The notes beneath the pieces are model-generated. The model was not told where the DNA came from and did not search any database. It saw only the letters and a program-made list of their open reading frames with translations. From Basidiobolus meristosporus CBS 931.73 (lineage: Eukaryota; Fungi; Basidiobolomycota): a stretch of DNA of 56,523 nt. Made by a program: the position numbers and the translations under genes. Every line of letters begins with the position of its first letter. The stretch's first letter is position 1. The DNA lies in the NCBI GenBank assembly GCA_002104905.1, contig MCFE01000579.1, positions 1 to 56,523 of the forward strand, in the 5' to 3' direction. Shown one piece after another: positions 8,967 through 17,468 of this stretch.

Positions 8967-9798
8967 TTATTGGAAAGTGGCCAAGTAGCTCAGCATGGCT
9001 GACATTAGGATGACCATGATGGACGGTATGGCCTGGACGGCCCCGTTAACACGCTCGGCGTTGGCATTTTGTTGTGGGGGGGTTGCGACGGGGTCGGCGG
9101 TGGTGGTTTGTGTGACTGATGGGGAAACGAGGGTGCTTGAAGGGACTACCGAAGTGATGGTGCTTTCGGGGACTACTGAGGATGCAGATGAGCTGTCAGT
9201 GGCTGGGGAGGATGTGGCGCTCGAAGAGGCTACGCTGGAAACAGCGGTGTTGGGGATGGTTGTCGTGACGGTTACAGTGGCGGCATAGGATTTGGAGGTG
9301 GTGGGGACGGGCGGGGCAACGGAGGCCGATGCGGAAGCACTGCTAGATGGGGATTCGCTGGCGTTAGCATCAGGAGCAGTGATGGTGAAGTATGGTGTGT
9401 AGGAGCCGTCACCGCCACCAGCCCGTAGAACGTATTGGCCAGGGGCGATGTCAGTAGGGATGGTCCATTCGTAGGTGCCAGCGGCAGAGCTCACACCAGA
9501 GGCAACATTGGCAACAAGTTGGAGAGTGTTGGCGTTGCCGTTTAGGAGATAAAGATCGAATGTTTCGGGCATCCCTTTGCCGTCGCCATTGTCGGTCCTA
9601 GAGTTGGATGGATTTGGTTAGTGAATGGAGCACGTGGGAAGGAGTGCACTGCTGGGATGAAGCATACCAGGTGATTATGTTCTTTGTACCTGCCTTCCAG
9701 TCAACACCCAAAGGGGCGGTGAAAGCAAGGGTGGCATCCACGACTGAGTAGCACACTAAGGAAGCAACGAACAGGATTTGGGCCGCTTGTTGAAGCAT
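8967..9798 (-). CDS. Secreted GPI-anchored Ser/Thr-rich cell-surface protein (Kre9/KNH-like N-terminal Ig-like domain)
   Basis: Exon 1 (9798-9668) encodes a signal peptide MLQQAAQILFVASLVCYSVVDA and FTAPLGVDWKAGTKNIITW. A GTATGC..CTAAC..TAG intron lies at 9667-9598. Exon 2 has YEWTIP..PGQYVL..YTPYFTI, an S/T/P-rich stalk and a hydrophobic C-terminal GPI signal. Confidence 0.85.
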
Positions 9799-11156: not shown

Positions 11157-13478
11157 TCACACTTGCATCATGTTGCTTGGAAATATGGGAAGGTTCATGT
11201 CGAATGCTGCTGAGCCGAAGTGGGCGGCCTCCGAGTTCTTTAGGATGATCTTGTGTAGGGAGTTGGCCCGTAGTACGTGCGATTCACTGGCCGAATGAAC
11301 CTTCTGTGTGCCTCCCAGCTGCGCCCATCGCCTAGCCCTGTCCCACTCCAATACTCGCACACTCCAAGAAATCGTTGGCCAGGTGCTCTTCAACTCCTCC
11401 GCCTTTTTGTGTAGCAGCGTGATCACTAGCTCCTTGGTTAGGCTCCCAGTGTTCGCGTCGGTTAGCTTGAGTTGGTGGACACAGGATAGGATTCCTTGTC
11501 TTGCTTCGTTGAGATATGTCTGATAGGAGAGCATTTTTCTTCGATATGCTACATATGCTGGGTTGTAAATATGGTTGTGAAGGGTTTCGAAATGCTTGAA
11601 AGAGTACATTGCGAGTCGCGGATGATGTGCATAGCTCTTGAGAATGTTGGATTCTTGTATAAGTCGTATTGGCTTGACTACCAGGATGATCCTAACCGTC
11701 TCAACCACCTCTCGGTTGTTCACCCGCCTGGGGATCTTTAGCTCGACGGTTTCCAGGTCGTAGATATGGGCCAAGCTCAGACTCAACCGGGACAGGTTCT
11801 GGAGTTTTAGCATCGCTTTGACTAGTTGGTATTTGAAGTAATGTGCGGGCGACTTTTTCTTTCGAAGCTTCAGGTCGAGGAAGAGGTCTTTGTCCAGATT
11901 CTCCTCGGGGGATTGCTGCTTGGTCTCCAATACTGCCTGCCATTCTTCTGCGCTCAACTCCGAATTTTCCCGGACTTTGATCATGGGAATCATATGGCGC
12001 CGATTTCGCGGAAGGAGAATGTTGATACTGGTTGCGGTGGTCTCCAAGTGGTACAGCCCAACGTACAGCCCGGGTGATGGCTTGACGGTGCGGGAGGCGT
12101 ATATAGTCCACGCTTGGGAGAGGATGGAGTAGCAAGGAGCGTATACCTTTGAATTCAATGACTCGATCGAGCGCCACTTCAACGCACCGCTCTTGATCAA
12201 GTCGGTAGCCACCGTAGGTAAGTATTTATCACAAACGTATTGCACGGTCAGGAGCACTTTTGAGTTGTATTTTGGAAGTTCCACCACCTGCTCGTAAAGG
12301 TTGCCCAACTGGGGCAATGGAAGAATCTTCATCATGTTATCAGCAGCCTCACAAAAGGCCATCCTTATGTTCTGAGAGTGCCGTTGTTGTCTGGAGTGGC
12401 GGTGGTGATTGGTGCTGTAGCACTCCGATACGTTGGTTGTTTCCCACTCCATCGAGCTCTTCAGAATCCATGAGAATTCCTCGCAATTCTCAGTAAACTC
12501 TTTCCCTCCATTGAGCGAGGAGAAATTCTCGGCAACAATCAGTGTCGGAAGCAAGCCACCAGCAGTCTGTAGTACTTTGTGGTCACTGCGGAAAAGTAGC
12601 GTGGACAGATACAGACAGTCCTTACGTAGTTTTGTCCTCAGTGAGGTGTACGAGCGGCCGAAGAGGCCGCTGAAGGAGTTTGGCTTTGGTGGTAGATATC
12701 GTATAGCTTCCTCTGAATTGCGCGACAGGATGGACTTCAAAAGAGATTCCTTGGTTGTTAGGGGAGTCGACAGGAAAGCATGAACTTGGTTTGAAATATA
12801 TTACCGATTTCGTGGATACCAATTCGAAGTAATCAGGTTTCTTGCTCAGCACTAAAAGGGATTTCTACAACAGGCGCATGATTAGCGAAGGGTTCATGCG
12901 CAGCCACAGAAAGAGGTTGTACCCTGGCTTCTGACGAATAGAAGTCTATGGGATAGTCATCGTTCAGCCAGCTATTCAAAGATTCACAGTAACTACAGTA
13001 TAATGCAGATTATCAGTTCACTACATCCTGATAAGATCATGCCCTCCTAACCACATCCTATACTGCATCTTCCACCAGGAGCTCATGAGCAAATACTTCA
13101 AACACGAAAGCAACGCCAGGAACTCACATTGCGTAACTCCAGTCTTCCCAATACTCAAATTTCTCACAGCACTGGGGGATCACAAGGGAACAAGTTTGGT
13201 TGAAGATGAATTGAAAGAAGGGATTGGTGAGATCATGATTGCAAAAGCGATCTAACACAAATGTCATACCAACTCCGCCACCTTCCGAACCGTAGTCCCC
13301 TGGGAGATGTGAAGAGTCAACGCCTTAATGCGTGAGACATCTTTCACCACGACTTCAATGCTTGGTCTGGTCCAATGGGCCTCCGTTAGTAATTGCGCAT
13401 AGGTTGTTCAGGAAACATCGTGAGTTACCGCAATGCGAAATAGTCAACATAATCAGCACGCTTTTCAATTAGACTCAT
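11157..13478 (-). CDS. Protein with a putative N-terminal ubiquitin-like/RA fold and a domain resembling the C-terminal conserved region of ANKFN1/Wide awake/Banderuola
   Basis: ATG at 13478. Introns include a GTAACT..TACTAAC..CAG intron after exon 1, plus 12865-12922 and 12750-12804; all three keep the frame, but one upstream junction is uncertain. The last exon (11157-12749) is a 527-aa ORF with LYLSTLLFRSDHKVLQT..LP, FSWILKSSMEW and PGLYVGLYHL..INILL..IPMIKVRENSELSAEEW. Confidence 0.75.
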
Positions 13479-16339: not shown

Positions 16340-17040
16340 GGCACATCTATTGGCCAAAAAAGTATCATACAGAAAGACAGCCTGGAAGGAATATGTTCCA
16401 AGAATTGTTATCCCGAGTAGTACAGGCCTGCCACAAGAGACAGCAATCCCTCATATATGTGAAGCTGGGATTAGGGCTACATAGACAACCAAGTTACAAA
16501 GACCACTCACAGAGTTCAGTCAAGGGGTATATTGAGCAAGTATAGATCTGAGCCAGTCATATAAGCCTTGAAGCAGTGTCTGTATGGTGGGAGCAAAGGG
16601 CCATGGTAAGGATGATAGAGTTTGGAAAACGAGCAGATTTGGTAGCTCCCTGTTTTGTTCAGTGTAACACAATCATATGCCTTGGCTTTTGTGCGTCAAG
16701 ATTCTTGGATTTACCAGAAAGTCAATCACCACCGCTTCCGTCAACACGACGAATTACCTTCAAGATCTGGCATAGTGATCACATTATCCATCAGCCCAAA
16801 AAGGGGATGTTCGAGTCTGTTACAGCTGGGGTATTCTCATTAGTGCAAGTGGCCATTCCATCGACCAAATCTAAACGATCCATTGTCACATTACAAGCCT
16901 TCGCAAATAATACAAATGGTGTACCCAGATAGGCCAATCAGCATCAAGGGCGACCATGGGTTTGCTTTAAATAGGACAGCAGCCACCTGCAGGTGGGAGG
17001 CGTCACTCAATCCATCACTATTATTTCACACCGCACACAT
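16340..17040 (+). pseudogene. Degenerate Ty3/gypsy integrase relic
   Basis: Across frames it reads RIVIP, VWW..M..FVQC..C, PPLPSTRRITFKIWHSDHI, GVFSLVQVAIP, GVP and ISIKGDHGFAL. This order matches the integrase zinc finger followed by the rve core, with stops and frameshifts. Confidence 0.5.
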
Positions 17041-17048
17041 TGTTGAAA

Positions 17049-17468
17049 ATGGTCAACGTTCAAACAGTAGACGGGAACACTTTCACTGTAGATGAGGCAC
17101 TGGCAAAACATTCCCATTACTTAAAGGACCATCCCGAGGGGAAGGAGCCTATCAGGCTCACGAAGGTTAACGGTGCTACCTTTAGTAAGGTCCTGGAGTA
17201 CCTAGAGCACCACAAAGAGGACCCGGTATTCACGCTCGAAGACACTAAGCAACAGGAGTTCTCGGAATGGGACAGACAGTTCGTTCAAGTTGACCAAGAT
17301 GCTTTGTTGGAGCTACTGGAAGCTGCACAACACCTAGATATTTATCCCTTAATAGCGCTGGCTGGGAAATCACTTACAAATATACTTGATAGACCTGATT
17401 CCCATGAGCTGCATACCTCTATTGAGAACGACGCAGTCATCATTTCCCAGGGACTTGCCTTCTTTTAG
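17049..17468 (+). CDS. SKP1-like: Divergent intronless Skp1 paralog with a truncated C-terminus
   Basis: MVNVQTVDGNTFTVD, PIRLTKVNGATFSKVLEYLEHHKED and EWDRQFVQVDQDALLELLEAAQHLDI..L match the Skp1 POZ domain and helices 4-5. The ORF ends at IENDAVIISQGLAFF. Confidence 0.85.
   Translation: MVNVQTVDGNTFTVDEALAKHSHYLKDHPEGKEPIRLTKVNGATFSKVLEYLEHHKEDPVFTLEDTKQQEFSEWDRQFVQVDQDALLELLEAAQHLDIYPLIALAGKSLTNILDRPDSHELHTSIENDAVIISQGLAFF

What the first reader, a model, noticed from the sequence alone, without database searches (positions are those of the whole stretch)
11157..13478. Fungal gene carrying the ANKFN1/Wide-awake conserved region without ankyrin or FN3 domains
Two blocks resemble the uncharacterised C-terminal region of animal ANKFN1 (Drosophila Wide awake/Banderuola; sleep timing and asymmetric division) as I recall it. 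The blocks are GLFGRSYTSLRTKLRKDCLYLSTLLFRSDHKVLQT..LPTL..FSWILKSSMEW and PGLYVGLYHL..INILL..IPMIKVRENSELSAEEW. Here they follow an N-terminal segment (IEVVVKD..LTLHISQGTTVRKVAELCCEKF) that reads like a ubiquitin/Ras-association fold, and the fly protein carries an RA domain at its C-terminus. If confirmed, this is a pre-metazoan, independently shuffled domain with a possible small-GTPase-effector role in fungi.
Basis: partly seen in the sequence, partly recalled or inferred. Interest (0 to 1): 0.75.

Follow-up and report, generated by a model that had tools for sequence, protein, structure and literature searches.

The report
Fungal ANKFN1/WAKE core with ubiquitin-like head
This Basidiobolus gene is a true fungal relative of the animal sleep and balance protein ANKFN1/WAKE: it keeps the conserved core, swaps the ankyrin and fibronectin parts for a ubiquitin-like domain, and belongs to a family spread across early-diverging fungi, so the core predates animals.

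Summary

- **Gene:** it lies at 11157-13478 on the minus strand of a Basidiobolus meristosporus CBS 931.73 contig. It has six exons and encodes 632 aa.
- **Gene model:** The deposited model (K493DRAFT_307129) is mis-spliced at its 5' end.
- **Homology:** exon 6 matches animal ANKFN1/wake over about 460 residues, not only in two blocks. BLASTP gives 1e-16, a family HMM gives 2e-14 against 1.8 billion proteins, and profile-profile comparison gives 99.7% at E 1e-25. The GLY signature is present as GLYVGLY.
- **Missing parts:** there are no ANK, FN3 or C-terminal RA domains.
- **Distribution:** relatives occur in Glomeromycotina, Mortierellomycotina, Mucoromycotina, Zoopagomycotina and an aphelid. 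A tree splits fungi from holozoans and each subphylum is monophyletic. This favours vertical descent over the horizontal transfer proposed in 2015 from a single Mortierella hit.
- **Not tested:** the small-GTPase-effector role remains inference.

The scan found paralogs of this gene before, on other pieces of the same genome.

The parts
13429..13478 (-). Exon 1: start codon and a short unstructured N-terminal tail
   Evidence: The ATG is at 13478 and the donor is GT. The start resembles that of ortholog P0002.
13270..13366 (-). Exon 2: strands 1-2 and the start of helix 1 of the beta-grasp domain
   Evidence: It is 78% identical to P0002 residues 22-53. The secondary structure comes from the model of P0002.
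13128..13171 (-). Exon 3: the rest of helix 1 (CCEKFEYWEDW motif)
12923..12992 (-). Exon 4: strands 3-4 of the beta-grasp
12805..12864 (-). Exon 5: last strand of the beta-grasp and the start of the linker
   Evidence: The deposited model runs on through the intron at this point.
11157..12734 (-). Exon 6: linker, ANKFN1-type core, non-conserved tail and stop codon
   Evidence: Intact 525-codon exon. BLASTP 1e-16 to insect ANKFN1.
12225..12635 (-).
   Evidence: hhalign of A against B gives 95% probability, E 3e-8 to 1e-8, over 123-124 columns. Reversed and shuffled controls show no signal.
11658..12089 (-).
   Evidence: G, L and Y of the signature are at least 90% conserved across 94 homologs.
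11325..11657 (-). C-terminal helical part of the core, ending in the SWSVRVLEWDR motif and corresponding to ANKFN1 conserved domain 3
   Evidence: It aligns with insect ANKFN1 up to residue 1207. The helices are at pLDDT above 90 in the model.

Best explanation
Shown: the gene encodes a 632-aa protein with three parts. The first is an N-terminal ubiquitin-like (beta-grasp) domain of about 80 residues. The second is a linker of about 40 residues predicted with lower confidence. The third is a core of about 440 residues that is homologous to the three conserved 'non-motif' domains of animal ANKFN1 (Nmf9, fly WIDE AWAKE/Banderuola). The core is itself a tandem duplication of an alpha/beta unit of about 140 residues: three strands, a helix, helices, then strands. 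The famous GLYLGYLK strand of domain 2 is the counterpart of the first strand of domain 1. The gene is one of at least five old paralogs in B. meristosporus. The family is present in most early-diverging fungal lineages and in an aphelid, and it groups apart from the holozoan proteins. The core was therefore most likely present in the opisthokont ancestor and lost in Dikarya. It was joined to different partner modules in different lineages: a beta-grasp head in fungi, CRIB or ANK-FN3 heads and an RA tail in holozoans. Inferred (my estimate about 0.3-0.4): because the core is repeatedly coupled to small-GTPase-binding modules (CRIB, RA, and here an RA/FERM-F1-like beta-grasp), it probably acts as the output part of a cortical scaffold recruited or switched by a Ras/Rap/Rho-family GTPase. 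In animals the protein binds Discs large and directs polarity, so in the fungus it would plausibly act in polarised growth.
For: Homology to ANKFN1:
- The family HMM against 1.84 billion proteins finds 210 hits. These include named ANKFN1/wake from an insect (E 2e-14, profile 122-596), Hydra, Clytia and a wasp, which carry ANK, FN3 and RA domains.
- BLASTP gives 1e-16 and 3e-15.
- hhalign gives 99.7% at E 1.1e-25.
- G, L and Y of the signature are at least 90% conserved.

Fold:
- The AlphaFold2 model of ortholog P0002 with 94 homologs has pLDDT 85 and pTM 0.85. The N-terminal domain is at pLDDT about 95 with beta-beta-alpha-beta-beta-beta order.
- The top Foldseek hit is the Grb14 RA domain bound to H-Ras, followed by Ufm1 (TM 0.84), the TBK1 ULD, RIAM and lamellipodin RA domains, and SHANK3 SPN.

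Distribution:
- Named hits come from seven Glomeromycotina genera, several Mortierellomycotina, Umbelopsis, Radiomyces, three Zoopagomycotina and Amoeboaphelidium.
- The head is shared by four of these lineages.
- The tree splits a fungal side (SH-aLRT 97) from a holozoan side (98), and every subphylum is monophyletic at 99-100.

Internal repeat.

A real, selected gene.

Literature:
- CRIB and RA modules and the functional importance of the GLY glycine are described in PMC4488434.
- Binding of the fly protein to Discs large is described in PMC9210315.
Against: - No experiment bears on function in any fungus.
- The fold search ranks RA, FERM-F1, SUMO-like and plain ubiquitin-like domains equally.
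- Pfam's RA model does not match. The only Pfam hints are sub-threshold hits to TUG-UBL1.
- hhalign of the head against the ANKFN1 RA tail reaches only 53.6% probability.
- The fold was predicted for the ortholog P0002, not for the window's own joined protein.
- No unicellular holozoan was identified by name in the tree, and the tree is unrooted. Placement of the fungal clade outside Holozoa is therefore suggested, not proven.
Confidence: 0.82

Rival explanations
1. The fungal genes stem from horizontal transfer of a holozoan (choanoflagellate-like) ANKFN1 core into a fungus, as Zhang et al. 2015 suggested from a single Mortierella hit, followed by spread within fungi.
For: PMC4488434 found only one fungal instance and none in basal or sister lineages. 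No Dikarya appear among the hits I could name. The tree is unrooted and has no named unicellular holozoans.
Against: Homologs are now seen in five fungal subphyla or phyla plus an aphelid. Each lineage is monophyletic at 99-100 support, and all sit on one side of a 97/98-supported split from the holozoan proteins. A fungus-specific head is shared by four lineages. A transfer would have to predate the divergence of these lineages, which makes it nearly the same as ancestral presence.
Confidence: 0.08
2. The N-terminal domain is a generic ubiquitin-like module, or a structural cap packed on the core, with no small-GTPase binding. On this reading the protein is not a GTPase effector. The homology and ancestry conclusions still hold.
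Against: The top Foldseek hit is an RA domain in complex with Ras. A nearly invariant Arg or Lys sits in the strand 1-2 hairpin, where Ras-binding domains contact switch I (this reading rests on established knowledge). hhalign to the ANKFN1 RA tail aligns strand 2 and helix 1 in register at P 1.3e-4. UniRef's automatic names call the Gigaspora homolog 'Ras-associating domain-containing' and an Actinomortierella homolog 'FERM domain-containing'. Holozoan relatives carry CRIB or RA modules (PMC4488434).
Confidence: 0.45
3. The resemblance is chance or compositional, or the locus is a decaying pseudogene.
For: Pfam, PDB sequence search and the ESM Atlas give nothing. The deposited gene model looks broken at its 5' end.
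Against: E-values of 1e-16 to 1e-25 over 400-460 aligned residues. The reading frame is intact. The exon structure and synteny are conserved with B. ranarum. Third codon positions are 44% identical against 91% for second positions.
Confidence: 0.01

Closest known systems
Animal ANKFN1 / mouse Nmf9 / Drosophila WIDE AWAKE (Banderuola, CG45058)
   Same: The whole conserved core, meaning non-motif domains 1-3, is shared. This includes the GLY strand whose first glycine is functionally essential in mouse. The aligned region is about 23-24% identical over about 460 residues.
   Different: The fungal protein has no ANK repeats, no FN3 and no C-terminal RA domain. It is half the length. A beta-grasp domain sits in front of the core, where animals have FN3. 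The signature reads GLYVGLYH rather than GLYLGYLK. The gene is multi-copy in Basidiobolus, whereas invertebrate animals have a single copy.
Mortierella verticillata homolog reported by Zhang et al. 2015 (PMC4488434), and the 'two Mucoromycote fungi' set aside by Ross et al. 2021 (PMC9210315)
   Same: These belong to the same fungal family. Mortierellomycotina proteins P0015, P0022 and P0023 are strong hits at E 1e-74 to 1e-59, and they share the N-terminal head.
   Different: They were described as core-only and as a possible horizontal transfer. Here the family is found across early-diverging fungi. It carries a recognised beta-grasp head, and Basidiobolus has a lineage-specific expansion.
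Ras-association and related beta-grasp domains (Grb14 RA 4k81, RalGDS RA 3kh0, afadin RA1 6amb, SHANK3 SPN 7c7i, FERM F1 lobes)
   Different: There is no significant sequence match to Pfam RA, so membership is unproven. The domain is equally close to SUMO-like and ubiquitin-like domains.

Membership tests
ANKFN1 orthology group (as defined in PMC4488434 and PMC9210315) | Two ankyrin repeats | tested here: not met
   Pfam finds no ANK in exon 6 or in seven Basidiobolus paralogs. Animal hits do show ANK. There is no room upstream, because the paralogs start about 20 aa before the beta-grasp.
ANKFN1 orthology group (as defined in PMC4488434 and PMC9210315) | Fibronectin type III domain before the core | tested here: not met
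   No fn3 hit. A beta-grasp occupies that position.
ANKFN1 orthology group (as defined in PMC4488434 and PMC9210315) | Three conserved non-motif domains | tested here: met
   Continuous alignment over about 460 aa to insect and Hydra ANKFN1. hhalign gives 99.7% at E 1.1e-25 over 396 columns.
ANKFN1 orthology group (as defined in PMC4488434 and PMC9210315) | GLYLGYLK peptide with invariant first glycine | tested here: met
   It is present as GLYVGLYH at 12051-12071. G, L and Y are at least 90% conserved in 94 homologs, but the later residues differ.
ANKFN1 orthology group (as defined in PMC4488434 and PMC9210315) | C-terminal RA domain (ancestral form) | tested here: not met
   The protein ends about 55 non-conserved residues after the core. 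There is no Pfam RA hit. An HMM built from ANKFN1-type RA tails finds 50 holozoan-type proteins and no fungal one.
Ubiquitin-like beta-grasp fold | Beta-beta-alpha-beta-beta-beta topology that superposes on solved UBL domains | tested here: met
Ras-association (RA, PF00788) domain | Significant match to the RA family profile | tested here: not met
   No RA hit at E up to 1 in Basidiobolus paralogs, and none at E up to 0.01 or 0.001 in other fungal homologs.
Ras-association (RA, PF00788) domain | Profile similarity to a bona fide RA set (the ANKFN1 RA tails) | tested here: inconclusive
   hhalign gives 53.6% probability at P 1.3e-4, with 28 columns of strand 2 and helix 1 in register.
Ras-association (RA, PF00788) domain | GTP-dependent binding to a Ras-family GTPase | not testable with these tools
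   This needs a binding assay.

The most novel reading that the evidence does not exclude
The ANKFN1/WAKE core is an ancient opisthokont module built by internal duplication of an alpha/beta unit of about 140 residues. It serves as the output domain of small-GTPase-controlled cortical scaffolds. In early-diverging fungi it is driven by an N-terminal Ras/Rap-binding beta-grasp head. These compact fungal proteins would then offer a simple system for working out the still unknown biochemical activity of a protein that controls sleep timing, balance and asymmetric division in animals.
Probability: 0.3. Interest if true: 0.7.

Novelty: new variant of a known kind. Interest (0 to 1): 0.5.

Why it matters
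ANKFN1/WAKE has strong genetics in flies, mice and fish, affecting sleep timing, vestibular function and asymmetric division. Its conserved core, however, has no known biochemical activity, fold class or solved structure.

Three points follow from the results here:
- The core is not an animal or holozoan invention. It is a widespread gene of early-diverging fungi that is probably ancestral to opisthokonts. This revises the published suggestion of horizontal transfer.
- Compact proteins of about 630 aa, without ANK or FN3, become available for structural and biochemical work.
- The fungal head adds a third kind of GTPase-type partner module to the CRIB and RA modules already known.

The internal duplication also reframes the three 'non-motif domains' as two homologous halves plus a helical end. 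This should guide mutagenesis, because the essential glycine strand has a twin in domain 1.

Tried and rejected
- **Pfam:** scans of exon 6 and of the paralogs gave nothing.
- **PDB by sequence:** the single-sequence search gave nothing. With the 94-row profile, only the FN3 columns contributed by animal rows hit titin and neogenin, and the core hit nothing.
- **ESM Atlas:** the best score was 0.78, which is chance level.
- **Word-indexed protein search:** it returned only Basidiobolus and Actinomortierella relatives, both with the single sequence and with the alignment. The exhaustive HMM search was what reached animals.
- **First AlphaFold2 run:** with 9 close paralogs it failed at pLDDT 36. 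The second run with 94 diverse rows succeeded.
- **Fold searches of the whole model:** the ubiquitin-like domain saturated both lists.
- **Naming unnamed hits near the base of each clade:** tracing their contigs led only to metagenome records.
- **CRIB motif:** a strict motif scan of all retrieved hits found none.
- **Joined protein:** Exon 6 was searched by reference. The small exons were compared with the ortholog by tblastn. Full-length inferences rest on the database ortholog P0002.

Full report
**Where and what.** The window is a contig of Basidiobolus meristosporus CBS 931.73, phylum Basidiobolomycota, an early-diverging fungus. The finding's interval holds one gene on the minus strand. 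Its last exon is an intact 525-codon reading frame at 11157-12734.

Upstream lie five short exons:
- 13429-13478
- 13270-13366
- 13128-13171
- 12923-12992
- 12805-12864

These are separated by GT..AG introns of 58-135 nt, and the frame closes at 1899 nt, which is 632 aa.

It agrees with ten paralogs and orthologs. It also matches the exon pattern of the syntenic B. ranarum ortholog P0002, whose middle exons are likewise 32, 14, 23 and 20 aa and which has a Kre9/KNH gene downstream in both species.

The deposited model for this locus (P0001, K493DRAFT_307129) is wrong at its 5' end. It translates intron sequence and a wrong frame at the start of exon 6.

The gene is under purifying selection. 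Identity to the ortholog is 0.80, 0.91 and 0.44 at codon positions 1, 2 and 3. dN is 0.136 and synonymous sites are saturated.

Exon 6 was searched by reference. The small exons were compared with the ortholog by tblastn. Whole-protein inferences use the database ortholog P0002, which is 77% identical.

**Is it related to ANKFN1?** Yes. Pfam, a PDB sequence search and the ESM Atlas are silent, and no Pfam family covers this core.

A profile of the Basidiobolus family was scored against 1.84 billion representative proteins and found 210 hits at E up to 1e-3. Those with names include:
- the same protein from Hydra, Clytia and a spider
- 'wake' from a wasp

These animal hits carry ANK, FN3 and RA domains in Pfam.

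Exon 6 alone aligns with the fly protein at BLASTP E 1e-16 (23% identity over about 460 residues) and with Hydra at 3e-15. An hhalign comparison of the Basidiobolus alignment with a separately aligned set of 32 holozoan cores gives 99.7% probability, E 1.1e-25, over 396 columns.

The homology is continuous from just before block 1 to the SWSVRVLEWDR motif. It therefore covers all three 'non-motif' conserved domains defined by Zhang et al. (PMC4488434), not only the two blocks. The signature GLYLGYLK appears as GLYVGLYH at 12051-12071. Its glycine, which is essential in mouse (PMC4488434), together with the following Leu and Tyr, is at least 90% conserved in 94 homologs. No ANK, FN3 or RA tail is present.

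**The N-terminal domain.**
- *First model.* A model built from nine close paralogs failed at pLDDT 36.
- *Second model.* With 94 diverse homologs the ortholog P0002 folds at mean pLDDT 85 and pTM 0.85. Residues 21-100 reach pLDDT about 95 and have the strand-strand-helix-strand-strand-strand order of a beta-grasp.
- *Foldseek.* The first PDB hit is the Grb14 RA domain bound to H-Ras. It is followed by the TBK1 ULD, Ufm1 (TM 0.84), kindlin F0, RIAM and lamellipodin RA domains, SHANK3 SPN and ubiquitin.

The fold is therefore confirmed, but the subtype is not.

*Hints towards RA type:*
- the top Foldseek hit is an RA domain
- a nearly invariant basic residue lies in the first hairpin
- hhalign to the ANKFN1 RA tails reaches 53.6% at P 1.3e-4, in register
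- UniRef's automatic names for two homologs are 'Ras-associating' and 'FERM'

*Hints against:*
- there is no Pfam RA match
- two sub-threshold matches are to TUG-UBL1

**Distribution and descent.** Named fungal hits come from the following groups:
- Glomeromycotina: Entrophospora, Rhizophagus, Geosiphon, Gigaspora, Ambispora, Paraglomus and Acaulospora
- Mortierellomycotina: several genera, one already labelled ANKFN1 by its submitter
- Mucoromycotina: Umbelopsis and Radiomyces
- Zoopagomycotina: Thamnocephalis, Syncephalis and Piptocephalis
- the aphelid Amoeboaphelidium

The beta-grasp head directly precedes the core in Basidiobolus, Zoopagomycotina, Glomeromycotina and Mortierellomycotina. 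It is absent in Umbelopsis and in animals.

A maximum-likelihood tree of the core (92 rows, 409 columns) splits a fungal-plus-aphelid side (SH-aLRT 97) from a side holding all named animal and RA-tailed proteins (98). Every fungal subphylum is monophyletic at 99-100, and the aphelid group branches near the base. This is the pattern expected from vertical descent with loss in Dikarya. It does not fit the single late transfer proposed when only Mortierella verticillata was known (PMC4488434). Later work set aside 'two Mucoromycote fungi' (PMC9210315).

There are two caveats. The tree is unrooted, and I could not name any unicellular holozoan among the rows.

Basidiobolus has at least five gene models in B. 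meristosporus and seven in B. ranarum. They form one clade with several subclades shared by both species, so this is an old lineage-specific expansion. Only one copy lies in this window.

**A further result: the core is an internal duplication.**
- *Short comparison.* Profiles of the two regions align at 81.6% probability, P 1.1e-5, over 48 columns. One reversed and 30 column-shuffled controls did no better than P 0.04.
- *Longer comparison.* With longer segments the alignment grows to 123-124 columns at 95% probability, E 3e-8 to 1e-8. It is also seen with holozoan rows alone (88%, 2.8e-6) and more weakly with fungal rows alone (49%, 1.7e-4). Reversed controls stay at 3.6% or below.
- *Secondary structure.* The matched elements agree in the model: three strands, a helix, further helices, then strands.

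In window coordinates repeat A is about 12225-12635 and repeat B about 11658-12089. The papers I read do not mention this.

**Mechanism.** What is shown is the architecture and the ancestry. What is inferred is the function.

In animals the protein binds Discs large and is needed for asymmetric division, and its loss affects sleep and balance (PMC9210315). Holozoan relatives carry CRIB or RA modules (PMC4488434).

The fungal version couples the same core to an RA/FERM-F1-like beta-grasp. I therefore think the most likely role is a cortical scaffold whose core is the output part and whose head receives a Ras-, Rap- or Rho-family signal, acting in polarised growth. I put this at roughly 0.3-0.4. 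The main rival is that the head is a generic ubiquitin-like or structural module.

**Surroundings.** The neighbouring genes are unrelated: a Kre9/KNH-like gene at 8970-9617 on the minus strand and a Skp1-like gene at 16971-17465 on the plus strand.

**Earlier notes.** Earlier notes of this scan describe paralogs of this gene on other pieces of the same genome with the same reading. I tested the claims independently here.

**Verdict.** The gene is a new architectural variant of a known family. Three points go beyond the literature I could search: the breadth of the family in fungi, the beta-grasp head, and the internal duplication.

Noticed in passing
window 12735-13478 (minus strand): The deposited gene model K493DRAFT_307129 (P0001) is mis-spliced. 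It reads intron sequence and a wrong frame, so it loses strands 1-2 and helix 1 of the beta-grasp and the first strand of the core. Two paralog models, P0005 and P0008, also look damaged in the same region of the alignment.
   Followed up: yes
window 11658-12635 (minus strand): The ANKFN1 core appears to be a tandem duplication of an alpha/beta unit of about 140 residues, so conserved domains 1 and 2 of the literature are homologous to each other. The ANKFN1 papers I read do not mention this.
   Followed up: yes
L001:56-1267 and L001:3921-6226: In B. ranarum the ortholog has a second family member about 2.6 kb upstream on the same strand (P0010, cut by the contig end). K7432_003366 and K7432_003367 are also adjacent paralogs. 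The window has no such tandem copy.
   Followed up: partly
P0016, P0017, P0021, P0165 (Glomeromycotina homologs): These proteins have 1000-1800 extra residues after the core with no Pfam domain. They also have a 150-250-residue insertion between the second repeat and the helical end of the core.
   Followed up: no
P0026 (metagenome protein, 1526 aa) and P0112 (553 aa): In these proteins the beta-grasp head plus core, or the head plus first repeat only, sits in the middle of the protein after 270-650 unannotated residues. The head-core unit therefore also occurs in other architectures, in unidentified organisms.
   Followed up: no
window 8970-9617 (minus) and 16971-17465 (plus): There are two neighbouring genes. 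One is a Kre9/KNH-like cell-wall gene that is syntenic with B. ranarum. The other is a Skp1-family gene.
   Followed up: partly
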